Shown: positions 32,934 through 63,733 of the stretch, piece after piece
Layout: each line of letters begins with the position of its first letter
Numbering within the stretch: the first letter of the stretch is position 1
Virus record (IMG/VR): IMGVR_UViG_3300027747_002221
Span: 1 to 64,000 of that record
Direction: 5' to 3' (one strand)
Length of the DNA stretch: 64,000 nucleotides
Notes under the pieces: model-generated
The model's database searches: none
The model's input: only the letters and a program-made list of their open reading frames with translations
Told to the model about the DNA's origin: nothing
Made by a program: the position numbers and the translations under genes

Positions 32934-32940
32934 ATATACA

Positions 32941-33017: not shown

Positions 33018-33024
33018 ATAAATT

Positions 33025-33099: not shown

Positions 33100-33110
33100 G
33101 AATATTTTTT

Positions 33111-33187: not shown

Positions 33188-33193
33188 AAATAC

Positions 33194-33269: not shown

Positions 33270-33270
33270 A

Positions 33271-33470: not shown

Positions 33471-33480
33471 ACTTGTTTCT

Positions 33481-33508
33481 ATTATAACATCATTACAATA
33501 ATTGTCAA
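33481..33508 (-). promoter_or_regulatory. Sigma70 early promoter
   Basis: TTGACA-16-TATAAT. Confidence 0.7.
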
Positions 33509-33518
33509 GCATTAATTT

Positions 33519-33596
33519 TGGAACCTAGGGTCAGATTTGAACTGACGATTTTACGGATTTGCAATCCGGTGCATTTGACCGCTCTGCCACCTAGGC
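33519..33596 (-). tRNA. tRNA-Cys(GCA)
   Basis: CCGGA-TTGCAAA-TCCGT, TCCA. Confidence 0.9.
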
Positions 33597-33631
33597 ATAA
33601 ACCATTATTTTGTAGCCTGTACACAAAATAA

Positions 33632-33707
33632 TGGCGTCCCGTACCGGATTCGAACCGGTGTGAATAGCGTGAAAGGCTACTATCCTAGGCCTCTAGATGA
33701 ACGGGAC
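33632..33707 (-). tRNA. tRNA-Glu(TTC)
   Basis: GTAGC-CTTTCAC-GCTAT, GCCA. Confidence 0.92.
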
Positions 33708-33710
33708 ATT

Positions 33711-33784
33711 TGGTCCTCTCGGATGGTAACGATCCAACGTCTATCGATTATCAATCGATTGCTCTACCTTTGAGCTACAAGAGG
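33711..33784 (-). tRNA. tRNA-Ile(GAT)
   Basis: ATCGA-TTGATAA-TCGAT, CCA. Confidence 0.9.
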
Positions 33785-49670: not shown

Positions 49671-49956
49671 TATTTAACTCCTTGGTTTCAATGTCATGTA
49701 CATATAATAACATCATGCTATAGTGTAACACCTTTAGTATGTCTTGTCTATTCCTTCCGGCTTTCTTTCCGTATCTTTGAACATATTTCATTACGTTCCC
49801 TGCGGTAAATCCGACACCGTGTCCATTATCAATAATAAATTCAGTTGCCTGAAATTTATTCATTGAATAATGTTGGCCGTAAGTGGCGTCGATATATTCT
49901 TTCAACTCGTTTAAAAGTTGATCTTCATTATATTTGTAGTTTATTTCTTTCTCCAT
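49657..49956 (-). CDS. DUF3310-like protein
   Basis: YIDATYGQHYS...GFTAGNVMKYVQRYGKK...DILKVLHY. Confidence 0.7.
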   Translation of the reverse strand: MEKEINYKYNEDQLLNELKEYIDATYGQHYSMNKFQATEFIIDNGHGVGFTAGNVMKYVQRYGKKAGRNRQDILKVLHYSMMLLYVHDIETKELNNANQ

Positions 49957-50672
49957 GGGTATCCATCCTTAAATTTCTTTTCCATCACACTATTGCCCCA
50001 TAAAAAGAAGTCAGCCTTGACCGAATCTTCTCTATTACCAACTCTATAATTCAATGAATATATTCCATTAGTATCATACGTAAACTCATGTTCGCGTAAT
50101 ACTTGCATTATGATACGATCTACTTCGGGTTGGTCGTCTGGATGCCTGGCCCTACGATACCATAAAGGAGATATTTGTATTGCGATAGATGTAGGTAAAA
50201 AGTATGCGCCCACATCCACAAAGAATTCTTGTTCGCTTAAACACGTATGCCATTTACCTAAGTTTTCACAATCGTCAAGACAAACATACTTACTATCTTT
50301 ATCAACAATTTTTCTTAATGAGAATGCCCAGTCATTAGTTTCACAAACTTTAACTAATGTTTCAATATGAGCAGGGTCAATGTAATTATCTTCGTCGAGA
50401 AACATCACATAATCAGAATCAACTAGATAAGGAAATGAACCATATATTCTATGACCATTATATTGGCTGTGCCCCGTATTGTGGGGCAAGGTAACTACCG
50501 TCGCGGAAGTTTCTAAATCTAATTGTTTAACCGCTTTTTCCTGAAACTCAGGCCCATCTATTACTATAAGATGTTCCACATTTTCATATGTCTGTTTTAC
50601 TACAGAATCTGCATTTTGTTTTAGGTAATCAGATCCTGTTGTAGGAGTGATTACCGTCACCTTTTTACTCAT
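49941..50672 (-). CDS. Glycosyltransferase family 2 (GT-A)
   Basis: VTVITPT...IVIDG...FLDEDN. Confidence 0.85.
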   Translation of the reverse strand: MSKKVTVITPTTGSDYLKQNADSVVKQTYENVEHLIVIDGPEFQEKAVKQLDLETSATVVTLPHNTGHSQYNGHRIYGSFPYLVDSDYVMFLDEDNYIDPAHIETLVKVCETNDWAFSLRKIVDKDSKYVCLDDCENLGKWHTCLSEQEFFVDVGAYFLPTSIAIQISPLWYRRARHPDDQPEVDRIIMQVLREHEFTYDTNGIYSLNYRVGNREDSVKADFFLWGNSVMEKKFKDGYPWRKK

Positions 50673-50674
50673 AA

Positions 50675-52048
50675 TTAAACCTTGTAATTTTGTAAGAAAT
50701 AATTTAAATCTTCTGGAGTACCAATGCCCCACATATTTTTAATCTCTTTTACACGAATCTTCTTTTCATCTAAAATTGCTTCATTGTATACCGGACAAAC
50801 ATAAAACTCATTATTTGTTCTAATATTCTTTTCTATCATTTGACTAGTATACTTAACATAGTCGCTTCCTCGTTTCCAATAATAAACACCGACGGTGGCG
50901 TTATTACTAATAACTTTTTTCTCCGCAACTTCTTTTACAAATCCATCCTCGCCGATTGAGGCATAACTCCATTTAGGATGACTTGCTTCAAATGTTAAAA
51001 TGCCACCTTCAATCGAATCTGCACTAAAAGCATACATACATGAATTAGAATCCCATTCCATATATTGATCGCTATTAGCAATTAACAATGGGTTATCATT
51101 ATCTATAAATTCTTTTGCCAATAGCGTTGTGCATGCCGCACCTTCAGTTACTCCCTCGACTTGTACTATTTTACAGTCTGGAGCTATTAAGTTCAATAGA
51201 TATTTTAAATTATATTTGTCATAATGTTCTTTTTGTACTATGAAGATATAATTGGCATCTATATTCAAATTATTAACAACAACCTGAATCATTGGTTTAC
51301 CATTAACCTCAATTAAAGGTTTAGGAAATGTGTATCCCGCAGTGGCAAATCTTGATCCTGCACCTGCCATTGGAATCAATACATTCAATTTATTATCACG
51401 CCAAGGTACCTTTGGACTGTTAGCTAATCCGTTTAGTAACATTAATTCTTTTCTTATTTTCTCCATAGATAAATCTTCGCAATTTTCTACAGGTAATAAA
51501 TGTGCTCCGCTAGCAATTGCTCCTGTCCTTCCGATATGACTATCCTCAATTATTAAAGTTTCTTTTGCAGTATATCCCATGGCAGTCATACATTTCCAAT
51601 ACATTTCCGGAAATGGTTTCGGTCTTTTAACATCCTCATTACTAACATAGTAATCTATGTATTCCAATATACCAATTTTTAATAAAGATAATTTTACTGT
51701 TTCTCTAATACTATTACTTGCAACAACTATTTTATATCCTATTTGCTTTAGTTCTGTGAATATGGATATTAATTTTTGGTCATGTGTAAAATGTTTAAAT
51801 GCATCTATGGTTGCAGATTGTTTATTTTGCCATACAGAATTAAATTCCGCTTTTGGTAATCCTTTTTCTGAATGTAGTAATTCTAATTTGGCAGTGGTAT
51901 TTAATCCATCATACTTACTTAGATGTTCCTCTCTGGTAATTACATACTTAGGATCAATTTTATTTAAAGCAGAATTCAATGCATCGTAATGAAGTTCTCT
52001 ACTATCAATTAGAACTCCATCCAAATCAAAAATTATTAATTTAATCAT
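50675..52048 (-). CDS. HAD phosphatase fused to sugar-nucleotidyltransferase
   Basis: N-terminal IFDLDGVL...IEDS; C-terminal IPMAGAGSRF..GY.FPKPLI. Confidence 0.85.
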   Translation of the reverse strand: MIKLIIFDLDGVLIDSRELHYDALNSALNKIDPKYVITREEHLSKYDGLNTTAKLELLHSEKGLPKAEFNSVWQNKQSATIDAFKHFTHDQKLISIFTELKQIGYKIVVASNSIRETVKLSLLKIGILEYIDYYVSNEDVKRPKPFPEMYWKCMTAMGYTAKETLIIEDSHIGRTGAIASGAHLLPVENCEDLSMEKIRKELMLLNGLANSPKVPWRDNKLNVLIPMAGAGSRFATAGYTFPKPLIEVNGKPMIQVVVNNLNIDANYIFIVQKEHYDKYNLKYLLNLIAPDCKIVQVEGVTEGAACTTLLAKEFIDNDNPLLIANSDQYMEWDSNSCMYAFSADSIEGGILTFEASHPKWSYASIGEDGFVKEVAEKKVISNNATVGVYYWKRGSDYVKYTSQMIEKNIRTNNEFYVCPVYNEAILDEKKIRVKEIKNMWGIGTPEDLNYFLQNYKV

Positions 52049-52971
52049 ACTCGGTTAGGTTTAAAAATTTCAAAAGGATTTACAGGAATAGGTGCCAGTC
52101 TTTGTAACGGCACATGTCTAATAATATTATTATAGTATTGTACAAAACAATCTTCGGGCGTGTGGTATGTTTCGTAGGAATTTAAACTTCTACTTCCCCA
52201 CTCCCTCCATCGTTCTTCTTCTAAAAGCCACACTATTTTATCTTTTAGATCAGAACAATCCATATTGTATTCTACATATTCATCAAAGAACATATGTCCT
52301 TTTGATATACTATCTAAAGGTAACTTAGGTTGTAAAATTGCTGCACCTGCACTTGCCGCTTCCCAAATTCTCCAGCTATCGTAACTGTTACCTGGATAAT
52401 TTACCACAATCTTAGATCTATTTAAAATATCTAAAGTTTTAGGAATATTTCTTTCATGCGAATACTTTATTGCCCAATTGATATTTAACTGTGGTTGTAT
52501 TTGAACTAATTTATCTACAAAAAAGTTTCGTCTTTGATTTGTAGGTGCTCCAATAAAACAAACATCCACATCTCTTTCCCTATTTAAATAATCGTTCACC
52601 GATGGAATAGGAAAGTGCATTGGATATATAGGACAATTATAATGTCTATTGGTGTTACTTGTCAATTCTCTATGCATAATTAAATCGGGTGATCTCGAGA
52701 ACCATCTACTAACATCTTCCGAATCTGTATCATCATGCTGAATAAAGAAACTATTCTTTAAAGAAGTTTCTAGCAATCTACTAATTATAGGTAAATGATG
52801 CGGGTCATGTAGATATGCAATTACAACTTTATACTCACAGTTAGGAACGAATGATTCTAGTTCAGGCTCTCCTATAAAATCACAGTCGTACCCAGTATTT
52901 TCTAATGATTTAAAAATAAAAGTACTATTAGGTACCCAATGGTAATTTAAAAATAAAATATCTTTTATCAT
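52045..52971 (-). CDS. GT-B-like glycosyltransferase
   Basis: DVCFIGA...RR...LNRSKIVVN..G...RIWEA. Confidence 0.65.
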   Translation of the reverse strand: MIKDILFLNYHWVPNSTFIFKSLENTGYDCDFIGEPELESFVPNCEYKVVIAYLHDPHHLPIISRLLETSLKNSFFIQHDDTDSEDVSRWFSRSPDLIMHRELTSNTNRHYNCPIYPMHFPIPSVNDYLNRERDVDVCFIGAPTNQRRNFFVDKLVQIQPQLNINWAIKYSHERNIPKTLDILNRSKIVVNYPGNSYDSWRIWEAASAGAAILQPKLPLDSISKGHMFFDEYVEYNMDCSDLKDKIVWLLEEERWREWGSRSLNSYETYHTPEDCFVQYYNNIIRHVPLQRLAPIPVNPFEIFKPNRV

Positions 52972-52973
52972 AG

Positions 52974-53615
52974 TTATTCCACTTCCATAAATTCATATGA
53001 TATTGCAACTTTGTCTCCGGCACCGTGTTTGCATTGAAAGACTTTAAATCCACGATCTATAAGCATATTGTCTAATACATCAGGATCCTTAACGTGTGGA
53101 AATTCGTATCTTATAAAAGATATTGGTATGTTTATAGTCCTAAAAATGTTATCAAGAACATCATATTCTAATCCTTCAATATCTATAAACAATCCATGTA
53201 TTTTAGTTAAGTTATATTTTTCAACCAAATACTTAAATTCTTCAACTTTAACAAGGTCAAAAATTTCAGAAGCTTCATATCTAACAAGACTACTTTGTAC
53301 ACCCGGTTCGCGGACATGATCCTCGTTATGGTAAATCTTTTCATACTCATTTGTTTTTGTCGGAACAACGGCAATATTTTCAAAGTATAGTGTACTATTT
53401 GCATCCTTATAATTTTCTTTACACCGCTCAAATACTTCAGGCAATGGTTCTACTAGTATAGCGTTGTGTTTTTGTTCTAGGAGAATAGATCGTAACCCAT
53501 ACCCCTCACACATTATTCCGTCATTTGCTCCTAGTTGAATAAACCATTGCGTTTCCCCTGGTTTTAATTGTTCCTGATTTATTCGAATTAGATTTTGAAA
53601 GTCTATAGTTTTCAT
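52974..53615 (-). CDS. FkbM-family methyltransferase
   Basis: IQLGANDG...LVEP...FIDIEGLEYDVL. Confidence 0.8.
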   Translation of the reverse strand: MKTIDFQNLIRINQEQLKPGETQWFIQLGANDGIMCEGYGLRSILLEQKHNAILVEPLPEVFERCKENYKDANSTLYFENIAVVPTKTNEYEKIYHNEDHVREPGVQSSLVRYEASEIFDLVKVEEFKYLVEKYNLTKIHGLFIDIEGLEYDVLDNIFRTINIPISFIRYEFPHVKDPDVLDNMLIDRGFKVFQCKHGAGDKVAISYEFMEVE

Positions 53616-54289
53616 ATTATTTTGTATGTTATGTTATTATCTATTTTATGTTCCGAAGGAGTACCATAATTTGAAATATAAAATTTAAGGAAGTTTACTG
53701 CGTGCGTTGGATCAACATTGTGTTTGTCGTATATGTCTTGCATATGTTTATAAAAGGTACAATACTTTTCCATTACAGTATGATTACCAAATGCTAAATG
53801 ATCTGAAAAATCCCAGCCACCTATATCGGCAGGTATAATGAGTTCATCACTTTTATATAATTCTATATTCTTATAAGCAATATCTAATCGGGTTCTTAAT
53901 ATTATATCGTATTCACTAATAATAGATTTGAATCCCTCATTAACAAGATACCATTGGTCTCGGCATCTGTTAGCCCAAAATGTTCCATGTTCTATTGCTC
54001 TTGGATCAGTAACCATTACGTCATCCGATCTGTCGTTTTGTATAAAAGGTATTTTATTTTTATTGTAATGCTCAAGGTCAAAAATAGAACATGACATTAG
54101 ATTAGGAACATCCTTGAATATATCTCTTGTTACCTCAGAAGATATTATTTCTTTAGTTAATCTATTGTCACTAACATCCCAAGTTGCTATATACACGTCA
54201 GCATTATATTTGCGTATAAGTTCTTCTATAGTAAAAAATACTTTTTCAAATGTTCTAGAAAATCCTGTTAATAAAATTGCTACTCGCAT
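53612..54289 (-). CDS. Putative glycan biosynthesis protein (GT-like)
   Basis: RVAILLTGFSR...YDIILRTRLD...SDHLAFG. Confidence 0.55.
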   Translation of the reverse strand: MRVAILLTGFSRTFEKVFFTIEELIRKYNADVYIATWDVSDNRLTKEIISSEVTRDIFKDVPNLMSCSIFDLEHYNKNKIPFIQNDRSDDVMVTDPRAIEHGTFWANRCRDQWYLVNEGFKSIISEYDIILRTRLDIAYKNIELYKSDELIIPADIGGWDFSDHLAFGNHTVMEKYCTFYKHMQDIYDKHNVDPTHAVNFLKFYISNYGTPSEHKIDNNITYKII

Positions 54290-55068
54290 AAGGCATTATA
54301 CTCATGTAAATATTGTTCTTCAGTTAAATAGCATCCGAGCCGTTGTGGTTGAAAAGCCCAATTTAAATTTATAGCTCTTGCAGTAGTTATAGTATTCATA
54401 ACCTCAAAATTGTCAATTAGTGCGTGCATTGCTAAATCGTCTGGCCACTCTGTTATATCCAACTCAGGATTAACATATCTTTTAAGTAACATTTTGAACC
54501 AAAGATTCTCAGTACAAATAGAACCATTATTTCTTAACTCGGTTATTCTATTTATATCTAATTTTGGTATGTCCTCAAATACACGACCCCATTTTAAAAT
54601 ATCTTCTCTGGTACCAACTTGAAACCAATCGTTTGCCCTATATGTAGATATATCGATATCCGACCCTGGCCTAATAGTCATCATATTACCTATTAGTAAT
54701 TTCTCATCAAATGCACTAATGTTTGTTTTTGTTTTTTTTGGATAAGTATTTCTTAATTCGAATAGGTCTCTAAAATGTAATATGTCTGTTCTAGTAACCA
54801 TTACTTCAGACCCTGTACTAACAGATACGCCTACATAATAACTTTGTGCTTGTCTAAGAAACTGTTGCACAGGCCCTTCGCCTGGATCATCCGAACAAAC
54901 AATTTTATCCACACCAACTAACCCTTGTGTAGCATGTTGTTGACTATTCCATGTACTTAAGATAAGTTCTCCAGTATGCCAACTACGAATACTATCAATG
55001 ACCTGTTGTATATACACACTAGGTCTCTTATCAAATGCAATACTACCTCTTATAACTACAGATCTCAT
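54280..55068 (-). CDS. WavE-like lipopolysaccharide synthesis protein
   Basis: SVVIRG...ELILSTW...DPG...RTD...NDWFQVG. Confidence 0.55.
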   Translation of the reverse strand: MRSVVIRGSIAFDKRPSVYIQQVIDSIRSWHTGELILSTWNSQQHATQGLVGVDKIVCSDDPGEGPVQQFLRQAQSYYVGVSVSTGSEVMVTRTDILHFRDLFELRNTYPKKTKTNISAFDEKLLIGNMMTIRPGSDIDISTYRANDWFQVGTREDILKWGRVFEDIPKLDINRITELRNNGSICTENLWFKMLLKRYVNPELDITEWPDDLAMHALIDNFEVMNTITTARAINLNWAFQPQRLGCYLTEEQYLHEYNALCE

Positions 55069-55505
55069 TTTAGTTTTCCTACAAAATCGCTACATACTCC
55101 GTAACAGTTTAAATCTTTTATTCCGTCAAGGGTAGGATTCTTCCACTCAGGCATAACACATACACTACGAGTGGTTAGATCTTTGCCGGGATATGTCCAT
55201 ATCCATTTATGACTAGTAATAACATAATCGTCATTCTGATGCCAAAAATAATTAAGTTGAGTATTTGTCAACCATCTTAGTGCTGATAAATTTTTGGCAT
55301 GTATCCAAAGACCAAACTGATTAAGAAAATCTTCTCTGATATGATAATCGGGCCTATCATGACCTAACCACAATTCACTATTCTCAACCCATAGATCAAT
55401 TTCACAATCAAAGCCTTCCTTGAGAGCAACTTTAATTTGTTCTGGTCTATTTTCTAAATTTACATTTGGCCCATCGAATAGGCCTCTATGAGCAATTAAT
55501 TTCAT
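55065..55505 (-). CDS. Short GDPD/PLC-like phosphodiesterase
   Basis: LIAHRG...EN...EIDLW...GHD...WIHAKN. Confidence 0.65.
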   Translation of the reverse strand: MKLIAHRGLFDGPNVNLENRPEQIKVALKEGFDCEIDLWVENSELWLGHDRPDYHIREDFLNQFGLWIHAKNLSALRWLTNTQLNYFWHQNDDYVITSHKWIWTYPGKDLTTRSVCVMPEWKNPTLDGIKDLNCYGVCSDFVGKLK

Positions 55506-56239
55506 TTTCTAATATAGATGTTGTTGCCTTCATATTCGAAACCATTAATTTCAAATCCTCCAGGCAGTTCTTCAAAGCCAAGCTTAAATAAAAATTCTTC
55601 TATTTCAGGTTTTAAACTTTGGCCTTCGTAATATTCCTTTAGCCCAACTTCTGTAAAAATAACCTTTACATTTTTTAGTGTTTGAGAACCACCCTTAAAT
55701 ACATCTAGTTCTCCACCCTGCACATCTACCCATAAGGCATCAACAGATTTGATACCATTAGTCATTGCCCAGTGATCTAAGGTAAGTGCTTCCACCATAA
55801 TTTCTTTTTGTATCCAATTCTGATTAAAGAAAGTACCATTCATACCGTCAATAAATTTATACTTACTAGCAGCACCTGGATTATATCCTACGCCCTGAGA
55901 TGTATCAATATCATAAAATGTTAGTGGTCCATTTTTATTGGACAAGGCTACATTATAAATTTGTATTCTATCTTGTACGTCCTTTGGAACGCTACTCTTC
56001 ATCTGAATACATTCTCTTAAATTTTGAGGGCTAGGTTCAAATGCATGAATTGTTGCTGTAGGAAAAGCATAAGCAAATTCAATACTTTGTTTTAAATGCC
56101 AACTACCTATATCCAATACTGTTTCTATTGTATCAAAATCAATATAGTCAGCAATCTGTAATATTTTAGGTGAAGCAATATTTTCTCTGCCCGAGTTTGC
56201 CCAGCCTTTTAGTCTTTCTATGTAGTGATCATTCGCCAT
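55502..56239 (-). CDS. FkbM-family methyltransferase
   Basis: VLDIGS...HAFEP...WVDVQGGELDVF. Confidence 0.85.
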   Translation of the reverse strand: MANDHYIERLKGWANSGRENIASPKILQIADYIDFDTIETVLDIGSWHLKQSIEFAYAFPTATIHAFEPSPQNLRECIQMKSSVPKDVQDRIQIYNVALSNKNGPLTFYDIDTSQGVGYNPGAASKYKFIDGMNGTFFNQNWIQKEIMVEALTLDHWAMTNGIKSVDALWVDVQGGELDVFKGGSQTLKNVKVIFTEVGLKEYYEGQSLKPEIEEFLFKLGFEELPGGFEINGFEYEGNNIYIRK

Positions 56240-56558
56240 GTTGTATTACCTTTTTATCATTGCCGCTAGGCGTCTTTACACAAACAACCGTAGTATCTTC
56301 CAAAAATACAGGATCAGAAATTTCCCAGGGTTCGACTATAAAGATATCGCCAGTTTTTAATTCCTTATCCTGCATTATCATTCTACCACTAACTAATAAA
56401 TTAATCTCTGTGGTTGTGGTGTGATAATGCATATCCCATTTTTGACCTGCAGGATGTGTTCTATAATTAACTTCAAAATCTTTAGTATGATATGCAGTTG
56501 GTTCAAAGCCTCCGACAAACCAACCATCATGCATATCTTTTATGTTTAGTATTTTCAT
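56229..56558 (-). CDS. Cupin-fold protein
   Basis: GWFVGGF...HYH...TEINLL..GDIFIVEP. Confidence 0.65.
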   Translation of the reverse strand: MKILNIKDMHDGWFVGGFEPTAYHTKDFEVNYRTHPAGQKWDMHYHTTTTEINLLVSGRMIMQDKELKTGDIFIVEPWEISDPVFLEDTTVVCVKTPSGNDKKVIQHGE

Positions 56559-57652
56559 AATCCGTAATCTGTCCAATTTATAGTATTAAATCCAGAGTTT
56601 GTAATTGCACTTATACCTACTGCTCTATCCATATCATCAATATTCATTTTATCATTAATGATGTATCTGGATCCGCCACCCACTCCCATTACTAACTGAT
56701 CCCAAGCTAACCCAAAAGAAGTTAATTGTTCTTCGGTTATTTTGCGTGTGCTTTCTTTTCTTGCGGTGACAAAGATAATCTTATGACCTTTGCTATCCCA
56801 TTCATTAATTTTGTCAACTACACCCGGTAATATTGTAGGGGCATTCTTATAGACACCGCTTATAGTATGTTCATGTTTTAATACCGTACCATCTATATCT
56901 ATGAATAATGTCTTAGGTTTATTAGTATCAAATTCACCAACCTTGCCTAAATATTTTGCGACATCTTCAGGTGTACCTAACGGAATATATGCATTATTAA
57001 TTATATGAAAAGGTAAAATTTTAGCGTCACGCAAATAATTGAATGTCTCACTAATATAGCATTCTGGTCTTCCGGATATTCTAAAAGTATCTAGTAATTT
57101 TTTTGCGCTGGTGACAAAGTCTTTCCCTCTTTTCCAATAATGGAATCCAATCAGGGCATTATCAGAAATAGGATCCTTCTCCACAACCTTAAAAATTCTA
57201 TTTAACTTTATTTCAGCAAAACTATTTTTTGGATCTTTACTCTTATATAAAACAAGAGCAGCATCGGGGTCTTTATCTTTGACCCAAGATAAAAATGACA
57301 TAGGATCCCATTTAATTATTTGATCGCAATTATAAACAACCAATGGATTATCGTTATCAATAAGATCCTTTGCAAACAATACTGTATCTGCTGCACCATC
57401 TGTAGTATTACTTATTCTTATTTCTGTATAGTCTATATTTTTGTATTCAAAGATATCTGTCAATTCTTTATTATGCTCGGGATCATCAAAATCTCTAGTA
57501 ATAAAAATGAACTTACCCTTAACATTAAAACTATCTATAGAATGTTCTATTAAAGTTTTACCATTAACAACAATTAACGGTTTCGGTTTATCTATTCCGA
57601 TTTTTTGAAATCTAGTTCCCAGTCCTGCCATAGGGATAACAATGTTTATCAT
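56555..57652 (-). CDS. Sugar-nucleotidyltransferase fused to HAD-like phosphatase
   Basis: N-terminal IPMAGLGTRF...KPLI; C-terminal FIDIDGTV...TAR. Confidence 0.8.
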   Translation of the reverse strand: MINIVIPMAGLGTRFQKIGIDKPKPLIVVNGKTLIEHSIDSFNVKGKFIFITRDFDDPEHNKELTDIFEYKNIDYTEIRISNTTDGAADTVLFAKDLIDNDNPLVVYNCDQIIKWDPMSFLSWVKDKDPDAALVLYKSKDPKNSFAEIKLNRIFKVVEKDPISDNALIGFHYWKRGKDFVTSAKKLLDTFRISGRPECYISETFNYLRDAKILPFHIINNAYIPLGTPEDVAKYLGKVGEFDTNKPKTLFIDIDGTVLKHEHTISGVYKNAPTILPGVVDKINEWDSKGHKIIFVTARKESTRKITEEQLTSFGLAWDQLVMGVGGGSRYIINDKMNIDDMDRAVGISAITNSGFNTINWTDYGL

Positions 57653-58344
57653 ACCCTTACCCAATCATTAATAAGATGAAATTGGCTGCCTCGACCAACA
57701 TCATGATAGTATAATTTCTCAGCAGTTAAGTCTAAACTATCTGCTAGATGAATTATGCTACTATCTATACAATGTATTTCTTTGGCGTTTTTAATTACGT
57801 CTGTCCAATCTAATATAGTATCGGTCAATCCTGATTCAACATAGTATATAGGCAAATCTGTTGTTATGTCTAAATTGTAAGAACCAGGACTACCTTGACA
57901 ATGTACTAAGCAATAGTCTTTATCTTTTATAAACTTATTAAAGAATTCTTTACTAGAAGAATCATCTTTCGGCATTTGAAATTTATCCCATCTATCCTGA
58001 AATTCAATACCCGACATACCATAGAATTCAATATCGAAAAATTCAGATCCGCCACCCGTATAAATTATATCTAAGTGCGGTATATCTGTACGATACTCGG
58101 CAACAAATTGTTGTTCTTTTTCATATGTCTCATAAGGAATAGATACAGGAATTACTATATCAGAGTCTTCGTATAGTTTATTTACTGTAGGCAAATTAAT
58201 ATCTTTAACCATAAGATATAATCGCTCTACATCATATTTTTCTATAAGTCCATAAACCATACCATTACATATGATGTGGTCACCTAAACCTAAGTGGTGG
58301 TGTAATACTAATTCTTTAAATTTTTCCATCGTATACAGGCTCAT
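57649..58344 (-). CDS. Putative glycosyltransferase-like protein
   Basis: HHHLGLGDHIICNG...IHCIDSS..HL. Confidence 0.45.
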   Translation of the reverse strand: MSLYTMEKFKELVLHHHLGLGDHIICNGMVYGLIEKYDVERLYLMVKDINLPTVNKLYEDSDIVIPVSIPYETYEKEQQFVAEYRTDIPHLDIIYTGGGSEFFDIEFYGMSGIEFQDRWDKFQMPKDDSSSKEFFNKFIKDKDYCLVHCQGSPGSYNLDITTDLPIYYVESGLTDTILDWTDVIKNAKEIHCIDSSIIHLADSLDLTAEKLYYHDVGRGSQFHLINDWVRV

Positions 58345-58957
58345 CGTTTTCTGTGTATGTTTGACCTATGAAATTGTTATTTTCAAAATCATATGTCTCT
58401 CTCATCCAATCTACTTCTTTAACTCCATATATTGCAGTATCGTTCATTATGTTTGGCCAAACTTTATCTCTCAAATAAAATTGATCTACCAAATATTGTT
58501 TAACGGAAATATATTCTTGCATAGCATCCTTAAGTGTACTATCCATTATTATATTCTTCTTACCCCACATACCTGCTAATATAGGAAATTCGTAGTGTGC
58601 GTCGTGGTCTCGAATAACCATATAATTATATTCGGATTCGAGCCAGTTGTCAATAAGTTCTTTTTCTCTTAAACTTAATCTTGAATCTGTGTCCCTAGAT
58701 AATATCACACCTGGATTATTGAACATCATTTCAAATCTCCAGAATGCACCAAAACTATCATCTGTTACTTCTTTAACTATTGTATTTTTAAATGCAGATA
58801 GTTTATCTATTGTTTCTTTTGGTACGGTTGCATCGTAGTAAAATACGCATTTCCATTCAGGAAATATTTCTTCTGCAAGTTCTGCATTTCTAATTGCGCC
58901 CTGAAGATATTTAGGATTATCGCCCCAAATACTAAATGTGAAGTATTTGTCTACCAT
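58316..58957 (-). CDS. Putative glycosyltransferase-like protein
   Basis: FSIWGDNPKY...WRF...SRDTDSR...RDH...ILAGMWG. Confidence 0.5.
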   Translation of the reverse strand: MVDKYFTFSIWGDNPKYLQGAIRNAELAEEIFPEWKCVFYYDATVPKETIDKLSAFKNTIVKEVTDDSFGAFWRFEMMFNNPGVILSRDTDSRLSLREKELIDNWLESEYNYMVIRDHDAHYEFPILAGMWGKKNIIMDSTLKDAMQEYISVKQYLVDQFYLRDKVWPNIMNDTAIYGVKEVDWMRETYDFENNNFIGQTYTENDEPVYDGKI

Positions 58958-59895
58958 ACAAAATTTGACTTGTGCCAATCCACAACTTCTTCCAAACAAG
59001 TATCAAAATCTGCTTCGCATGACCAACCTATACTTTTTAACTTACTATCATCTATAGCATAACGTACATCTTGACCCTGGCGCTTTTCCGAAAAATCCAT
59101 ATACTTGTCGTAGTCTGTTCCGGTGCCAAAATAATTATCTATAATTTTTCTTGCAACAACGATATTCTTTTCTTCATAGTTACCCGAGATATTATAAATC
59201 TCATTGGTAACATTTTGAGAAACAATTAAAGAAACTGCATTTGCCGTATCTGAAACATGAAGCCATGTTCTAATAGGTTCACCGTTATCGTGCATAACGA
59301 TTGGTCTATTTAAAGTTAAATTCTTGCATGCTCGTGGAATAAATTTTTCTACATATTGTCCTATGCCATAATTATTAGTTGGTCTAACAATTACGTAAGG
59401 AATATCATATGTTCTTGCCCAGGCAATAACTAACATATCTGCGGCAGCTTTAGTTGCGGAATATGGATTGCTTGGTTTTAATAAATCTGTTTCAGTATGA
59501 AACCCTGAGACTAAGTCACCATACACTTCATCTGTACTAAAGTGTAGCAGTGTCGGTCTTCGTGATTTTGGTTTTTGTTTGATGAGTTCTAATATCTTAT
59601 GAACTCCGTTGATGTTACTTCGCAGGAAAACATCTGAGCTGACAATACTATTGTCCACATGAGTTTCTGCGGCAGTATTAATAAAGTAATCACAATCAAC
59701 TAATCGTTCGATATTGTTTATATCGCAACCATCAAATTTAAAATTTTTATATTCTAGTAATTCATAAAGAAAGTCTCTATTACTAGCGTATGTTTTACTA
59801 TCTATACCATAAACATAATGACCTTCATCTAGGAATTTTTTGGTTACATGGTAACCTATAAATCCTAAACATCCTGTGACATAAAGTATTTTCAT
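58951..59895 (-). CDS. NDP-glucose 4,6-dehydratase (RmlB-like SDR)
   Basis: TGCLGFIG, AAETHVD, STDEVYG, PSNPYSATKA, TNNYG. Confidence 0.9.
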   Translation of the reverse strand: MKILYVTGCLGFIGYHVTKKFLDEGHYVYGIDSKTYASNRDFLYELLEYKNFKFDGCDINNIERLVDCDYFINTAAETHVDNSIVSSDVFLRSNINGVHKILELIKQKPKSRRPTLLHFSTDEVYGDLVSGFHTETDLLKPSNPYSATKAAADMLVIAWARTYDIPYVIVRPTNNYGIGQYVEKFIPRACKNLTLNRPIVMHDNGEPIRTWLHVSDTANAVSLIVSQNVTNEIYNISGNYEEKNIVVARKIIDNYFGTGTDYDKYMDFSEKRQGQDVRYAIDDSKLKSIGWSCEADFDTCLEEVVDWHKSNFVW

Positions 59896-60656
59896 TTCAT
59901 ATATTCTTTCATTCCGTACATAACACCATATAGATCAAAATCTGATAAAAGATCTAGCATAGTGGAATCGCCAATATATGGTTTATCACTTGTGGATTCA
60001 ACTATTATTTCTTTATCTATATTATTTATATCGCAGAATAGTTGTAAAAATTCACTCAATGTTCTTTTCTTTTTATACACGCAATCTATTTGCCTGTGAT
60101 GATAGTTGTTGTTTATAACATATTCTATAATTTTATAAAAATCGCCAATGTAGATATAATCAAATTTTCTATCATTAGTTAAAACGAAAGGACCATCCGA
60201 TGCTAAAAATTTTTTTAATAATCTACTTTCCTTTTCTTCGGAACCAAAACATCCAAACAATTTAAGATTGGTAAATTTACTGGGATCTAAATCCCTAGAA
60301 ATCATTCTTTTAGAAAAAGCATATGCGCTGTTATTGGAATAATCTTGTTCAATACCGGATCCTATATTAATGTATCTTCCAAATAAATCAGAATTGGATT
60401 TGAAATTATAATACATTGCTAAGTTTTTAGCAACTATACTTGGATCATTACTGTTAACATTTTCGTTGCCACCAAAAGTAAGACAATTTATAACGAAATC
60501 GGGTTGAGATAGTTCTAATACATTTCTTACAGCGGCAGCGTCAGTTACATCTATACCCGGTTTGGAGATAGACATTACTGCATTATTCTTTGCTAATCGA
60601 GGAGCTATGTATGAACCTATAAATCCTCCAGCACCTAAAATAAGAATATTCTTCAT
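59892..60656 (-). CDS. NAD-dependent sugar epimerase/reductase (SDR)
   Basis: GAGGFIG...YAFSK (YxxxK). Confidence 0.75.
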   Translation of the reverse strand: MKNILILGAGGFIGSYIAPRLAKNNAVMSISKPGIDVTDAAAVRNVLELSQPDFVINCLTFGGNENVNSNDPSIVAKNLAMYYNFKSNSDLFGRYINIGSGIEQDYSNNSAYAFSKRMISRDLDPSKFTNLKLFGCFGSEEKESRLLKKFLASDGPFVLTNDRKFDYIYIGDFYKIIEYVINNNYHHRQIDCVYKKKRTLSEFLQLFCDINNIDKEIIVESTSDKPYIGDSTMLDLLSDFDLYGVMYGMKEYMK

Positions 60657-61396
60657 TTTATTTTCACTATCATTTCTTTGGTTAATTCCTCATCTGAAAG
60701 GAACGGAGTCATATCATGCAGACCAGCTTGCTTGCCATTCTTCAATGCTTGCGCTGGTAAGATCTCCTGGTCTTCTAAACATTTACAATCTATAATCATA
60801 GGACCAACTGTTTCTAATAATCTAGGTAAATTATCAAGACTAGTTTTATTTTTAATAGGAGCATATTTCATACCAAAGGATGCAGCAATGTTTCTAAAAT
60901 CAGGAAACCATAATCCTGATTCAGAACTTGTACCGAATACTCGCCCATCAAAGTATTTAGATTGAGTATTTTTAATACTTAAGTAGCCATTGTTATTCAA
61001 TATAATAAACTTAATATTAAGATCATGGAGTTTTACCACAGCCAGTTCTTGAAGATTGCTCATAAAACTACCATCACCCATAATAGATACAACAGGTTGA
61101 TTACTAGCCATGCTTACACCGATTGCCGCCGGTAATGCCCAGCCCATATCTGCTTGTGCTGGGCTCGATATAAATCGTTGTCCCTGTTTAACATTTAATG
61201 CAACAGGACCAGCATAACTAATACTACCAGCATCCCCCATTAAAATGTCTTCGGGTCTACTGTGTTTATTAATAGCATCTAATACTGCGTATAAATTTAA
61301 TGCGTTATTTTCATTAGTTGCTTCCCACTCGGGTTGCATTACCGGCCAAATATTTTTCCAATGGTTACATTTATCTATCCAATGTTGATGCTTCAT
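60653..61396 (-). CDS. TPP-dependent enzyme, C-terminal (TPP-binding) half
   Basis: QADMGWALPAAIG...GDGSF..N...NN (GDG-x24-NN). Confidence 0.88.
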   Translation of the reverse strand: MKHQHWIDKCNHWKNIWPVMQPEWEATNENNALNLYAVLDAINKHSRPEDILMGDAGSISYAGPVALNVKQGQRFISSPAQADMGWALPAAIGVSMASNQPVVSIMGDGSFMSNLQELAVVKLHDLNIKFIILNNNGYLSIKNTQSKYFDGRVFGTSSESGLWFPDFRNIAASFGMKYAPIKNKTSLDNLPRLLETVGPMIIDCKCLEDQEILPAQALKNGKQAGLHDMTPFLSDEELTKEMIVKIK

Positions 61397-62403
61397 ATCA
61401 TTTCCTTAAAAAAGTCAGATAGCGACATACAAATCTTTTCATTGATAAATAGTACATCTTTCTTTAGTTCATTATCATCTATGTCAATTAGTATTTTATA
61501 ACTCTCAGGGCTAAACTGGGTTGGGTCATATCCAACAACACTAGAATTTAAACTACTACCCAATACTAATAAACAATCCGCATTCTGCATAGCAAAATTC
61601 CCTGCTCTGCTACCCTTAATACCTACCGCACCAATATTCAAAGGATGTGACCCAGGAAAGTAATCTCTTGCACCATATGTACTAACAAAAGGTAAATCAT
61701 ATGTTTCAATAAAATTTACAAATTCTTTAACTGTGTTACTTTGTCTGATACCGTAACCTGCCAAGACAACTGGTCTTTGTGCTGTATCTAGTATAGTCTT
61801 TATTCTAGATAAATTATTTCTCGTATAGGATGGGGCTGGGTCTACATATAAAGTATAATCCTCTGGCATTTGTGCTGTTTGTACATCTCCCGGAATATCT
61901 ATCCAAACAGGACCTCGACGACCTTCTTTAGCTAGGTGTATAGCATAACTTAATTGATATGCTACATCTTCGGGGCTAGTAATAAACTTACTATATTTAG
62001 TCATCCCGGCATATGTACTAACAATATCGTGTTCTTGGACACCATATTTTCTAAGACTAATACCCTTTTGCATATTGATCCAACTACTACAAGTATTTAA
62101 TCTAACATTGCCTGATAAAAATAAAACAGGGACACCATCTTGCCAGGCATTTAATACAGATGTAGCACAGTTAGTTCCCGCACATCCTGTTGTAGGATTG
62201 ACTACTGAGAGTTCACCTGTAAATTTACTCTCACCAATAGCAGCATGACCGGCACCTTGTTCATGATGATAACAGATATAACCTATCTTACCGTGCTTAA
62301 TAAAACCATCGTTTAATCCGCTAGCACCCCCGCCCATTAACCCATGGACTTTAGTAATACCTTGCTGGTATAAGTAATTAGCAATCCAATCGCATACTCT
62401 CAT
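61393..62403 (-). CDS. TPP-dependent enzyme, N-terminal and middle domains (acetolactate-synthase/YerE-like)
   Basis: HHEQGAGHAA...TTGCAGTN...GPVWIDIPGD...RPVVLAG. Confidence 0.88.
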   Translation of the reverse strand: MRVCDWIANYLYQQGITKVHGLMGGGASGLNDGFIKHGKIGYICYHHEQGAGHAAIGESKFTGELSVVNPTTGCAGTNCATSVLNAWQDGVPVLFLSGNVRLNTCSSWINMQKGISLRKYGVQEHDIVSTYAGMTKYSKFITSPEDVAYQLSYAIHLAKEGRRGPVWIDIPGDVQTAQMPEDYTLYVDPAPSYTRNNLSRIKTILDTAQRPVVLAGYGIRQSNTVKEFVNFIETYDLPFVSTYGARDYFPGSHPLNIGAVGIKGSRAGNFAMQNADCLLVLGSSLNSSVVGYDPTQFSPESYKILIDIDDNELKKDVLFINEKICMSLSDFFKEMI

Positions 62404-62410
62404 ATTTTTC

Positions 62411-63733
62411 CTAAGTAAATAAACCCATAAATCCATCTACAACTTCACCAATATATTCAATTTGTTCGGGTGTAATAACTGGACTTGTTCCATGGAAGAA
62501 TGTGTTTGTCATAACCATTGTTGCAATAGGGAAATTTGCTTTAGCATCTGCAGGATCCATAATATGAGAATACGCAGGTTGTAGCATAATATTACCAGCA
62601 AAATATGGCCTTGTCTGAATAAGTTTCTCTTCTAAGTATTCCACAATATCACTTCGTGTAAAAGGAGAACCTTTACGAATAGTTAAGGGGAATGCAAACC
62701 AACTGGGATCAGAATGTTCTTGTGGTCTAGGCAAATGGAAATACTCTTCATACTTACTATAGATATCAAATAACAATTTATAGTTACGTCTGCGTAGGAA
62801 ATGAATCTGATCTAATTTTTCTAGTTGAACTAATCCCATTGCTCCCTGCATTTCAATTGGTTTTAAATTATAACCAATTTCATCATACACATACTTGTGG
62901 TCAAATATTTCACCCGGCATTGTAGGAATCCATTCTTGGAATCGTTTACCGCAAGTACCACACTTTAGTTTGTTGGCTTCAGGACCTACACAATAACAAC
63001 CTCTGCCCCATTCTCTAAATGATCTAGCAATAACTTCTGTCTCATAAGTTTTACATGCTACAAATCCGCCCTCACCCATAGTCATATGATGTGCAGGATA
63101 AAAAGAACAAGATGCCATTTCACCAAATGATCCTAATGGCTTGCCGTCATAAGTACTACCTAAAGCATCACAACAATCTTCCAATAAGATTAAATCATAC
63201 TTATTAACTAATTCCATAACCCATCTCATATTAGGAGGATTGCCTAATACGTGAGCAAATGTAATTACCTTAATATTATGTTGCTTAATTAATTCTTCTG
63301 CTTTGGTTAAATCTAGATTAAGTGTGTCTAATTCAATGTCTAAAAATACAGGTTCAAACCCTAGTTGTAATGTAGGGTTTAGCGTTGTAGGAAATCCTGC
63401 GATTGGCATTAATACTTTAGTACCTTTAGGTAAATTATAACCTCTTTTAGAAGTCAATGTAGCCATCATAAGTAGATTGGAACTTGATCCTGAGTTTGTT
63501 AAGATACCGCGTTCTTTACCAAACTGTTTAGGGAATTCCTTCTCAAACTTTAATGACTTGTCCCCCATAACTAACCAACCATCGAGTAAAGTATCTATGA
63601 CAGACAAATACTCGTGTTCGTCAAAATAGGGGCCTGCGTAATTTACGAAATCTTTACCCGCAGTCCATGTCTTATTTGCTGCCTTATTCTGAAAATAAGC
63701 AGCTACACCATTAATGATATCTTGTTTATTCAT
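62411..63733 (-). CDS. rfbH: CDP-4-keto-6-deoxyglucose 3-dehydratase E1 (RfbH/DdhC)
   Basis: NSGSSSNL, EDCCDALG, SFYPAHH (His in place of the PLP Lys), GRGCYC...C.C iron-sulfur motif. Confidence 0.88.
   Translation of the reverse strand: MNKQDIINGVAAYFQNKAANKTWTAGKDFVNYAGPYFDEHEYLSVIDTLLDGWLVMGDKSLKFEKEFPKQFGKERGILTNSGSSSNLLMMATLTSKRGYNLPKGTKVLMPIAGFPTTLNPTLQLGFEPVFLDIELDTLNLDLTKAEELIKQHNIKVITFAHVLGNPPNMRWVMELVNKYDLILLEDCCDALGSTYDGKPLGSFGEMASCSFYPAHHMTMGEGGFVACKTYETEVIARSFREWGRGCYCVGPEANKLKCGTCGKRFQEWIPTMPGEIFDHKYVYDEIGYNLKPIEMQGAMGLVQLEKLDQIHFLRRRNYKLLFDIYSKYEEYFHLPRPQEHSDPSWFAFPLTIRKGSPFTRSDIVEYLEEKLIQTRPYFAGNIMLQPAYSHIMDPADAKANFPIATMVMTNTFFHGTSPVITPEQIEYIGEVVDGFMGLFT

What the first reader, a model, noticed from the sequence alone, without database searches (positions are those of the whole stretch)
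59892..63733. Yersiniose-like branched 3,6-dideoxyhexose pathway with a naturally split TPP enzyme
Seen: RfbH/DdhC (His at the PLP-Lys position, Fe-S motif), then an ALS-like enzyme in two ORFs joined by an ATGA overlap with an AAGGA SD before the second, then an SDR. Established: in Yersinia, E1 (DdhC) makes the 3,6-dideoxy-4-keto sugar, TPP-dependent YerE adds a two-carbon branch from pyruvate, and YerF reduces it to yersiniose A. Inference: the phage makes a rare branched-chain sugar using a two-subunit YerE. No E3 reductase (DdhD) is visible in this window.
Basis: partly seen in the sequence, partly recalled or inferred. Interest (0 to 1): 0.65.

Follow-up and report, generated by a model that had tools for sequence, protein, structure and literature searches.

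The report
Split YerE-like sugar-branching enzyme in phage
A large T4-like phage carries a tightly packed operon that most likely makes a rare carbon-branched 3,6-dideoxy sugar. Its branching enzyme is encoded as two genes, and that split is shared by dozens of uncultured phages.

Summary
On the minus strand lie an E1/RfbH-type 3-dehydrase (62411-63733), a ThDP enzyme in two ORFs (N+middle domains 61393-62403; ThDP-binding domain 60653-61396, joined by an ATGA overlap after an AAGGA), a short SDR (59892-60656) and an RmlB-type 4,6-dehydratase (58951-59895).

The split is real. All 52 distinct IMG/VR relatives keep the two domains adjacent, and 75 of 83 loci have the same ATGA overlap. Both halves show dN/dS of about 0.1. 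Natural fused orthologues (63% identity) bridge the cut with a variable linker. A complex model scored 0.92 against 0.21 for the best control.

Both halves, and a fused orthologue, match the YerE-like enzymes JanthE and PpYerE better than any acetolactate synthase. They separate from E. coli IlvB, IlvI, Gcl and PoxB in a tree. Bacterial fused homologues sit in canonical ddhA-ddhB-ddhC cassettes.

Three things differ from Yersinia. No E3/DdhD, DdhA or DdhB is found in the 222-kb genome. The 4,6-dehydratase is dTDP-glucose type. The donor keto acid and the product are unknown.

This is a new variant of a known kind, biochemically untested.

The parts
62411..63733 (-). E1/RfbH(DdhC)-type PMP/[2Fe-2S] NDP-4-keto-6-deoxyhexose 3-dehydrase, 440 aa
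   Evidence: NCBIfam RfbH 445.7 bits, above the 423-bit cut-off. Yersinia E1 3bcx scores 344 bits, and His sits at the H220 (PLP-Lys) position. The His and four Cys ligands are invariant in 52 homologues; the phage clade has a 5-aa insertion with one extra Cys.
61393..62403 (-). ThDP enzyme, first subunit: PYR (TPP_enzyme_N) and middle (TPP_enzyme_M) domains, 336 aa, YerE-like
   Evidence: Pfam. Best PDB hit is JanthE 8rph at 161.9 bits, then PpYerE 5ahk at 144.8, then E. coli AHAS I at 139.5. The catalytic Glu in HHEQ is invariant. The best 120 database homologues are nearly all 335-342 aa (one each of 323 and 347 aa).
60653..61396 (-). ThDP enzyme, second subunit: PP (TPP_enzyme_C) domain with GDG...NN motif, 247 aa
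   Evidence: Pfam. Best PDB hit is JanthE at 113.1 bits against 71.8 for the best AHAS. GDGS and NN are invariant. It lies directly after the N half in every related locus.
61393..61407 (-). Split junction: AAGGA (61407-61403), ATG of the C half (61396-61394) overlapping TGA of the N half (61395-61393)
   Evidence: Sequence read. The identical ATGA overlap at the homologous site occurs in 75 of 83 loci, with a purine-rich GGAG/GAGG/AAGG core upstream.
59892..60656 (-). Short extended-SDR NDP-sugar reductase (254 aa), candidate side-chain ketoreductase (YerF role, inferred)
   Evidence: Pfam Epimerase/RmlD_sub_bind, weak. AlphaFold2 pLDDT 94.3. Foldseek best matches are GDP-fucose synthase, RMD and RmlD, TM about 0.8. 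Homologues occur in 35 of 52 distinct loci.
58951..59895 (-). RmlB-type NDP-glucose 4,6-dehydratase, 314 aa
   Evidence: TIGR01181 scores 292 bits (cut-off 365), against 65 bits for the CDP-glucose type. Best PDB hits are dTDP-glucose 4,6-dehydratases, 213 bits. Present in 48 of 52 distinct loci.
56555..57664 (-). Sugar-1-phosphate nucleotidyltransferase fused to a HAD phosphatase domain (369 aa); candidate supplier of the NDP-hexose
   Evidence: Pfam NTP_transferase plus HAD families. Only a weak rmlA_long match, 62.6 bits. It is not a cytidylyltransferase (TIGR02623 15.6 bits). Its role in this pathway is inferred from position only.
49941..58999 (-). Rest of the glycan island inside the window: GT2, beta-PGM-like HAD-nucleotidyltransferase fusion, GT1-like, three FkbM methyltransferases, WavE-like protein, cupin, unknown ORFs
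   Evidence: Pfam. The island continues past the window end to about 69.7 kb of the genome, with GT10 fucosyltransferase, FkbM, fcl and gmd.

Best explanation
The operon is a phage-borne cassette for a 4-C-branched 3,6-dideoxyhexose nucleotide (yersiniose-like). The steps below are inferred from homology and gene order.

1. An NDP-hexose, possibly made by the nucleotidyltransferase-HAD fusion, is turned into NDP-4-keto-6-deoxyglucose by the RmlB-type 4,6-dehydratase.
2. The E1-type PMP/[2Fe-2S] dehydrase removes the 3-OH. The phage has no E3, so the two electrons must come from host ferredoxin or flavodoxin systems, as shown in vitro for SpnQ.
3. A YerE-like ThDP carboligase decarboxylates a 2-oxo acid and adds the acyl unit to C-4 of the keto sugar, making a tertiary alcohol. 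Pyruvate is the simplest candidate donor, because the window holds no donor-making gene.
4. The short SDR reduces the side-chain carbonyl.
5. The many glycosyltransferases and methyltransferases of the 20-kb island use the product.

The carboligase is made as two polypeptides: PYR plus middle domains, and the PP domain. The cut lies in the inter-domain linker. The second ORF is translated by coupling at an ATGA overlap behind an internal Shine-Dalgarno-like site. The halves are expected to assemble into the usual dimer-of-active-sites architecture, an (alpha-beta)2.

Shown here: gene content, motifs, conservation of the split, affinity to YerE-like enzymes rather than AHAS, and a supportive complex model. 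Inferred: all chemistry, the electron source, the donor, the nucleotide and the target of the glycan.
For: Domains and families.

E1 identity and ligands.

YerE-like affinity:
- JanthE is the top PDB hit for both halves.
- For the natural fused orthologue L076 the order is JanthE 255.9 bits, PpYerE 208.7, E. coli AHAS I 184.3, plant AHAS 176.
- JanthE and PpYerE are described as YerE-like in PMC12188165 and PMC12247030.
- The family separates from E. coli IlvB/IlvI/Gcl/PoxB with SH-aLRT 99.
- Features shared with JanthE and absent from the E. coli enzymes: an insertion in the PYR domain, NNxGYLSIKxTQ in place of NNxxLGMVxQWQ, and a C-terminal extension.

Context:
- E1 is present in 49 and the 4,6-dehydratase in 48 of 52 distinct viral loci.
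- The fused bacterial homologue in Scalindua sits in ddhA(460 bits)-ddhB(522)-rfbH(739)-aminotransferase-TPP-SDR. The Zoogloeaceae locus is similar.
- The Parcubacteria homologue is followed by an HpaI-type aldolase. This matches the published logic for erwiniose (PMC9306805).

Split:
- The best 120 homologues are nearly all 335-342 aa.
- 75 of 83 loci have ATGA, 2 have TTGA and 1 has TAATG.
- dN/dS is 0.09 for the N half and 0.105 for the C half against L009.
- Fused orthologues have a 16-24 aa variable linker at the cut.
- Complex prediction gave ipSAE 0.92, with 0.21 for the best of 3 controls. That mark was reached by 58 of 80 solved complexes and 2 of 110 mismatched pairs. Partner pLDDT was 90 and runs agreed in at least 97% of contacts. 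The pass may partly reflect memory of single-chain homologues.

SDR fold.

E3-independent precedent: SpnQ, a dTDP-sugar enzyme that uses ferredoxin or flavodoxin reductase pairs (PMC8987622).
Against: - No E3/DdhD-like protein (Fer2, NAD_binding_1) exists in the complete genome or in five related phage records. E1 activity therefore depends on an unproven host donor.
- No DdhA or DdhB is present, and the dehydratase is dTDP-glucose type. Whether this E1 accepts its product is unknown.
- The SDR has almost no sequence similarity to any characterised enzyme. It is missing or replaced in about a third of related loci.
- More distant split relatives (L093, L094) show no E1 within the contig stretch seen, so the family's acceptor is not always a 3,6-dideoxy sugar.
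- 32 of 52 sister loci carry a class-I aminotransferase next to the ThDP genes. Its role is unexplained and it hints at other donors or a different chemistry.
Confidence: 0.68

Rival explanations
1. Same enzymes, different branch. The carboligase uses a 2-oxo acid other than pyruvate, so the product is a longer acyl-branched sugar (erwiniose or caryophyllose type) and not a yersiniose-like C2-branched one.
For: YerE-family donors range from C3 to C8, and ErwE rejects pyruvate (PMC9306805, PMC12247030). Sister loci place keto-acid-making enzymes beside the ThDP genes: a class-I aminotransferase in 32 of 52, an HpaI aldolase in L005 and a PanB-like protein in L094.
Against: This phage has no aminotransferase, and Pfam found no aldolase among the island genes scanned. 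Any special donor would therefore have to come from the host. Pyruvate is the most economical assumption.
Confidence: 0.2
2. Without E3, the E1 homologue does not deoxygenate C-3 in the Yersinia manner. It works ColD-like, acts as a transaminase, or is idle. The ThDP enzyme then branches a different keto sugar, such as NDP-4-keto-6-deoxyglucose.
For: No E3 in the genome or in relatives. The distant split members L093 and L094 lack a visible E1. SpnQ transaminates when no reductase is present (PMC8987622).
Against: All four Fe-S cysteines and the catalytic His are invariant in 52 sequences. That is hard to explain if electron transfer were lost. E1 is kept next to the ThDP genes in 49 of 52 loci. 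Bacterial cassettes with canonical ddhA/B/C also lack a nearby E3.
Confidence: 0.12
3. The two ORFs are an auxiliary metabolic acetolactate synthase for branched-chain amino acids, unrelated to the sugar genes.
For: The best NCBIfam names are acetolactate synthase large subunits. Source annotations say the same.
Against: Scores are far below every AHAS cut-off (176.6 against 538). No small subunit is present. The tree separates the family from IlvB/IlvI. YerE-like structures outrank all AHAS. The AHAS QW motif is replaced. Sugar-gene context is constant.
Confidence: 0.03
4. The split is an assembly or sequencing frameshift, or a decaying pseudogene.
For: None beyond the bare fact of two ORFs. 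Read-level checking was not possible.
Against: The identical junction occurs in 75 of 83 independently assembled loci from many samples. The best 120 protein clusters are nearly all 335-342 aa. dN/dS is about 0.1 for both halves. Start codon and SD-like core are conserved. The C frame has a stop 4 codons upstream of its ATG, so no simple single-base correction rejoins it in the native register.
Confidence: 0.01

Closest known systems
YerE of Yersinia pseudotuberculosis and YerE-like ThDP lyases (ErwE, JanthE, PpYerE, MMAR_2332)
   Same: The PYR/middle/PP domain set, the catalytic Glu and the GDG...NN motif are shared. JanthE and PpYerE are the best solved relatives. The gene sits beside a 4,6-dehydratase, an E1 and a reductase, as yerE does. 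Bacterial members of the same family lie in ddhA-ddhB-ddhC cassettes.
   Different: Here the enzyme is encoded as two genes cut between the middle and PP domains, whereas all characterised members are single chains of about 570-620 aa. It is phage-borne. Identity to JanthE is low (about 162 + 113 bits). Donor, acceptor nucleotide and FAD content are unknown.
CDP-3,6-dideoxyhexose pathway (DdhA, DdhB, DdhC/E1, DdhD/E3) of Yersinia and Salmonella
   Same: E1 is a clear orthologue-level match, above the RfbH cut-off, with the His and Fe-S ligands.
   Different: No DdhA, DdhB or DdhD is present. The 4,6-dehydratase is RmlB-type.
SpnQ (spinosyn forosamine pathway)
   Same: It is an E1-type Fe-S 3-dehydrase with no dedicated E3 in its cluster. 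It acts on a dTDP-sugar and is served by general ferredoxin or flavodoxin reductases (PMC8987622). The phage cassette has the same logic.
   Different: SpnQ acts on a 2,6-dideoxy substrate in an actinomycete antibiotic pathway. By sequence the phage enzyme is nearer to Yersinia E1.
Two-subunit ThDP enzymes that branch sugars: AviB1/AviB2- and KbDH-alpha/beta-type (alpha-ketoacid dehydrogenase E1-like) enzymes and split-gene transketolases
   Same: A ThDP-dependent acyl transfer to a keto sugar by a heteromeric enzyme (PMC12247030).
   Different: They belong to other ThDP superfamilies with different domain orders. The phage enzyme belongs to the decarboxylase/AHAS-like superfamily, where a split YerE-like member is not mentioned in the two reviews read.
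Sulfopyruvate decarboxylase ComD/ComE (own knowledge, not tested here)
   Same: It is a decarboxylase-superfamily ThDP enzyme with PYR and PP domains on separate polypeptides.
   Different: It lacks the middle domain, has a different reaction and no sugar context.

Membership tests
YerE-like ThDP carboligases (decarboxylase superfamily) | PYR, middle and PP domains with the catalytic Glu and the GDG-X(25)-NN ThDP motif | tested here: met
   Pfam N+M in ORF 1 and C in ORF 2. E48 in HHEQ is invariant. GDGS...NN is invariant.
YerE-like ThDP carboligases (decarboxylase superfamily) | Single polypeptide of about 570-620 aa | tested here: not met
   Two ORFs of 336 and 247 aa. Natural fused orthologues of 594-614 aa exist at 63% identity.
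YerE-like ThDP carboligases (decarboxylase superfamily) | Closer to characterised YerE-like enzymes than to AHAS, glyoxylate carboligase or pyruvate oxidase | tested here: met
   The PDB ranking is led by JanthE for each half and for the fused orthologue; PpYerE ranks second for the N half and the fused orthologue but below the AHAS entries for the C half. The family is a clade apart from the E. coli anchors, SH-aLRT 99. Limits: only four anchors, quick LG+G4 tree, and JanthE and PpYerE could not be placed in the tree.
YerE-like ThDP carboligases (decarboxylase superfamily) | Groups with YpYerE, ErwE and MMAR_2332 in a phylogeny | not tested
   These sequences were not obtainable through the tools.
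YerE-like ThDP carboligases (decarboxylase superfamily) | Encoded beside genes that make an NDP-4-keto-deoxyhexose, plus a reductase | tested here: met
   E1 in 49 of 52, the 4,6-dehydratase in 48 of 52 and the short SDR in 35 of 52 distinct loci. Bacterial ddh cassettes show the same.
YerE-like ThDP carboligases (decarboxylase superfamily) | Accepts a ketone (keto sugar) as acceptor; binds FAD | not testable with these tools
   Needs enzyme assays.
E1 / RfbH / DdhC 3-dehydrase | Equivalog score, His replacing the PLP lysine, and the four-Cys [2Fe-2S] motif | tested here: met
   445.7 bits against a 423-bit cut-off. H220 and C192/193, C251, C253, C266 are conserved. The phage clade has a 5-aa insertion between the second and last Cys.
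E1 / RfbH / DdhC 3-dehydrase | Dedicated E3 (DdhD) reductase partner | tested here: not met
   No Fer2 or NAD_binding_1 in the complete genome. No NAD_binding_1 in 5 related records.
Yersiniose A pathway (ddhA-D, yerE, yerF) | CDP-glucose entry: DdhA cytidylyltransferase and DdhB CDP-glucose 4,6-dehydratase | tested here: not met
   TIGR02623 best 15.6 bits and TIGR02622 best 69.8 bits in the whole genome. The dehydratase is RmlB-type.
Yersiniose A pathway (ddhA-D, yerE, yerF) | YerF side-chain ketoreductase | tested here: inconclusive
   An NDP-sugar-reductase-fold SDR follows the ThDP genes. Homology to YerF and its regiospecificity could not be tested.
Biosynthetic acetolactate synthase (IlvB/G/I with IlvN/M/H) | Large-subunit equivalog score and a small regulatory subunit | tested here: not met
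   TIGR00118 scores 176.6 bits against a cut-off of 538. No TIGR00119 in the genome.

The most novel reading that the evidence does not exclude
A phage-typical lineage of heteromeric (two-gene) YerE-type carboligases works with an E3-independent Fe-S 3-dehydrase on a non-CDP nucleotide sugar. It builds undescribed 4-C-acyl-branched 3,6-dideoxyhexoses that these T4-like phages put on their virions or on the infected cell's surface. The variable neighbours in sister phages (class-I aminotransferase, aldolase, PanB-like enzyme, FkbM methyltransferases) would mean the branch itself differs from phage to phage.
Probability: 0.3. Interest if true: 0.75.

Novelty: new variant of a known kind. Interest (0 to 1): 0.57.

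Why it matters
C-branched deoxy sugars such as yersiniose are so far known from bacterial lipopolysaccharides and antibiotics. The papers found do not describe a phage-encoded pathway, and no cultured phage in the 50,697-record collection carries a close copy of the ThDP gene.

If the reading is right, three things follow:
- A large group of uncultured T4-like phages invests about 20 kb in making an unusual glycan, which bears on host recognition, superinfection exclusion or virion decoration.
- E1-type 3-deoxygenation commonly runs without a dedicated E3.
- Nature offers a ready-made two-chain YerE, together with natural fused orthologues for direct comparison. This could be useful to the biocatalysis community that engineers YerE-like enzymes for tertiary alcohols.

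Tried and rejected
- **No close cultured phage.** Megablast of the operon against cultured-phage records found nothing. tblastn of the N half found only hits of 32% identity or less over most of its length (one partial hit of 37%), mostly in records annotated as bacterial ilv genes or in unannotated records.
- **Few genome hits.** The genome-contig scan gave only three loci because it depends on two peptide patterns.
- **Source names uninformative.** Cluster names were only 'acetolactate synthase' or 'thiamine pyrophosphate-binding protein'.
- **Characterised sequences out of reach.** YpYerE, ErwE, YerF, JanthE and PpYerE could not be fetched as sequences. They are not in the tree and were compared only through PDB score ranking and printed alignments.
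- **Programmed -1 frameshift considered and rejected.** Such a shift would make a fused protein. But the C frame carries TAA four codons before its ATG, and no slippery heptamer lies in that short stretch. A shift at the upstream TTTTTT run would land on that stop.
- **ColD identity for the dehydrase considered and rejected.** gmd lies upstream, but the E1 match is much stronger (344 against 188 bits) and the Fe-S cysteines absent from ColD are conserved.
- **Confounded count.** tblastn counts with the 310-aa SDR cross-hit the 4,6-dehydratase, so they were not used.
- **Technical.** The first structure prediction failed and was repeated.

Full report
**Setting.** The window is the first 64 kb of a 222,055-bp IMG/VR virus record that CheckV rates as complete. 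It encodes T4-type replication proteins. Its DNA polymerase is at best 49% identical to those of Synechococcus myoviruses, so it is a distant, uncultured T4-like phage. The finding lies in a minus-strand glycan island of about 20 kb. The island runs from about 49.9 kb to about 69.7 kb of the genome and holds glycosyltransferases (GT2, GT10, a GT1-like protein), a WavE-like protein, several FkbM methyltransferases, two nucleotidyltransferase-HAD fusions, and gmd plus fcl.

**Observation.**
- The first gene (62411-63733) passes the NCBIfam RfbH equivalog cut-off (445.7 against 423 bits). It aligns end to end with Yersinia E1 (3bcx, 344 bits). The first His of SFYPAHH sits where the H220K mutant entry 3bb8 has Lys. 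That His and the cysteines C192/193, C251, C253 and C266 are invariant in 52 distinct homologues. The phage clade carries a five-residue insertion with one additional Cys.
- The next two ORFs carry TPP_enzyme_N plus TPP_enzyme_M (336 aa from the ATG at 62403) and TPP_enzyme_C (247 aa).
- The sequence reads ...AAGGAAATGATATGAAG.... The stop TGA of the first ORF overlaps the ATG of the second, and AAGGA ends 6 nt before that ATG.
- A 254-aa SDR and a 314-aa 4,6-dehydratase follow, each again with a 4-nt overlap. The split junction therefore looks like any other gene junction in this translationally coupled operon.

**Is the split real?**
- A word-indexed protein search with the N half returned 1,678 hits. 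Nearly all of the best 120 are 335-342 aa long (two are 323 and 347 aa) and all are 66-99% identical, so they are N halves only.
- Pattern scans fetched 80 IMG/VR loci and 3 metagenome-assembled bacterial loci. In every one the C-half homologue follows directly.
- Of the 83 loci, 75 have the identical ATGA overlap at the homologous site, two have TTGA, one has TAATG and six are fused (one of these was not itemised in the tally printed). A GGAG/GAGG/AAGG core is kept upstream.
- The 80 viral loci hold 52 distinct N-half sequences.
- dN/dS against the 88%-identical relative L009 is 0.09 for the N half and 0.105 for the C half.
- The six fused loci encode one chain of 594-614 aa: the Parcubacteria locus at 41% identity and five viral contigs at 63%. 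Their chains bridge the cut with a poorly conserved 16-24-residue linker between the FFxx end of the middle domain and the (E/H)WIxKC start of the PP domain.
- The cut therefore lies in an inter-domain linker. Both arrangements exist in nature. A sequencing artefact or pseudogene is excluded for practical purposes, although raw reads could not be consulted.
- A complex model of the two halves supports binding: ipSAE 0.92, with 0.21 for the best of three controls. That mark was reached by 58 of 80 solved complexes and 2 of 110 mismatched pairs. Partner pLDDT was 90, and runs agreed in at least 97% of contacts. The contacts join the HHEQ region of the PYR domain to the GDG region of the PP domain. 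The pass may owe something to the model's memory of single-chain homologues.

**What kind of ThDP enzyme?**
- NCBIfam names it acetolactate synthase, but at 176.6 bits against a 538-bit cut-off.
- Against solved structures, both halves hit JanthE (8rph) best: 161.9 and 113.1 bits. E. coli AHAS I scores 139.5 and 62.6, and the best plant AHAS scores 71.8 for the C half.
- The natural fused viral orthologue gives JanthE 255.9, then PpYerE (5ahk) 208.7, E. coli AHAS I 184.3 and plant AHAS about 176.
- JanthE and PpYerE are the two structurally solved YerE-like enzymes (PMC12188165, PMC12247030).
- An exhaustive representative search found 923 relatives at E below 1e-30. In a tree of 138 N-region sequences the whole family is one clade, separated from E. 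coli IlvB, IlvI, Gcl and PoxB with SH-aLRT 99.
- The family shares features that the E. coli enzymes lack and that JanthE shows in the printed alignment. These are a 9-12-residue insertion after SG(N/Q)V in the PYR domain, NNxGYLSIKxTQ where AHAS has NNxxLGMVxQWQ, and a C-terminal PFL..EE extension.
- No AHAS small subunit exists in the genome.
- Limits: the tree is a quick LG+G4 search with four anchors. The family members were chosen as nearest neighbours. YpYerE could not be included.

**Context.**
- Among the 52 distinct viral loci, E1 is present in 49; the three exceptions are cut by contig ends. The RmlB-type dehydratase is present in 48 and the short SDR in 35. Loci without the short SDR carry another extended SDR.
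- A fused homologue from Candidatus Scalindua (44% identity) lies in a textbook cassette. The order is glucose-1-phosphate cytidylyltransferase (460 bits), CDP-glucose 4,6-dehydratase (522 bits), RfbH (739 bits), a class-I aminotransferase, the ThDP enzyme and an SDR.
- A Zoogloeaceae homologue has nucleotidyltransferase, dehydratase, DegT-family protein and ThDP enzyme in a row.
- The Parcubacteria homologue is followed by an HpaI-type aldolase. That is the arrangement used to explain erwiniose, where an aldolase makes the 2-oxo-acid donor (PMC9306805).
- This is the strongest functional evidence that the family branches NDP-4-keto-deoxyhexoses.

**Differences from Yersinia.**
- The complete genome has no Fer2 or NAD_binding_1 protein, hence no E3/DdhD. 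Five related phage records, two of them complete with terminal repeats, also have no NAD_binding_1 protein. The two bacterial cassettes have none within 8 kb either.
- There is no DdhA or DdhB. The dehydratase is nearest to dTDP-glucose 4,6-dehydratases (292 bits on TIGR01181 against 65 on the CDP type; best PDB 2hun at 213 bits).
- The logic therefore resembles SpnQ. That enzyme is an Fe-S 3-dehydrase of a dTDP-sugar pathway with no dedicated E3, and general ferredoxin or flavodoxin reductases serve it in vitro (PMC8987622). The invariant Fe-S cysteines argue that electron transfer is still used. The donor would be a host protein; this is inferred.
- The SDR folds with high confidence (pLDDT 94.3). 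It resembles NDP-sugar reductases such as GDP-fucose synthase, RMD and RmlD (TM about 0.8). It has almost no sequence match to anything solved, so its YerF-like role follows only from position and chemistry.

**Evolution of the split.** In the tree the window lies in a 29-row clade (SH-aLRT 98) of 22 split and 7 fused sequences. Split forms sit at its base. The fused viral group is nested among split viral loci, but behind weakly supported branches. A split early in this largely phage-borne clade, followed by at least one re-fusion, is the most economical reading, but it is not proven. More distant split members (52% and 42% identity) also lie on phage-like contigs. They have 8- and 14-nt overlaps and no visible E1. 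One contig carries a fused paralogue as well, and another a PanB-like gene. PHROGs holds a 568-position family of unknown function that covers both halves.

**Literature.** Full-text searches found no paper linking yersiniose or YerE to phages, and none describing a split YerE-like enzyme. The 2025 review lists two-subunit sugar-branching ThDP enzymes only from other superfamilies, and mentions more than 200 predicted YerE-like enzymes in bacterial clusters (PMC12247030).

**Verdict.** This is a new variant of a known kind: a conserved, phage-typical two-gene YerE-like carboligase inside an E3-less, RmlB-fronted 3,6-dideoxyhexose cassette. The nucleotide, the donor, the electron source, the final sugar and its destination remain to be measured.

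Noticed in passing
L011 6845-8014 (and 31 other distinct viral loci); L090 6826-8004: A 389-392-aa class-I/II (aspartate/alanine-type) aminotransferase sits between E1 and the ThDP genes in 28 of 52 distinct phage loci, and in the Scalindua ddh cassette. It is absent from this phage's genome. Its role is unknown; it could make the donor keto acid, aminate the branch, or relate to the missing E3.
   Followed up: partly
window 28018-33784: A cluster of 25 tRNA genes on the minus strand covers most amino acids.
   Followed up: no
window 579-8161: The low-GC block (26-28% GC, against 33-43% elsewhere) is packed with 2OG-Fe(II) oxygenase-like ORFs and two radical-SAM proteins, one with a B12-binding domain.
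   Followed up: partly
window 50675-52048 and 56555-57664: There are two different fusions of a sugar-1-phosphate nucleotidyltransferase with a HAD domain. One has a beta-phosphoglucomutase-like domain at the N terminus, the other a Cof/IIIB-like phosphatase domain at the C terminus. Neither reaches any curated equivalog cut-off.
   Followed up: partly
genome 65358-69734 (L002 2359-6734), just beyond the window end: A complete GDP-fucose route (gmd, fcl) lies upstream of E1, with a GT10 alpha-1,3-fucosyltransferase and an FkbM methyltransferase. Two unknown ORFs (306 and 243 aa) co-occur with the cassette in about 15 of 52 loci.
   Followed up: partly
L093 1-481 and 7001-8771; L094 4101-6853; L005 8001-11351: Distant relatives vary in their neighbours. 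One phage-like contig has both a fused and a split ThDP enzyme. Another has a PanB-like ketopantoate hydroxymethyltransferase next to the split pair. The Parcubacteria fused gene is followed by a HAD protein and an HpaI-type aldolase. This suggests varied 2-oxo-acid donors.
   Followed up: partly
window 39638-40453: A 271-aa ORF with a signal-peptide-like N terminus lies directly downstream of the DNA polymerase gene. It was not scanned against families.
   Followed up: no
window 56229-56576: A 115-aa cupin in the island has weak Pfam cupin matches and belongs to PHROG 24762 (unknown function). It could be a sugar isomerase or epimerase.
   Followed up: no
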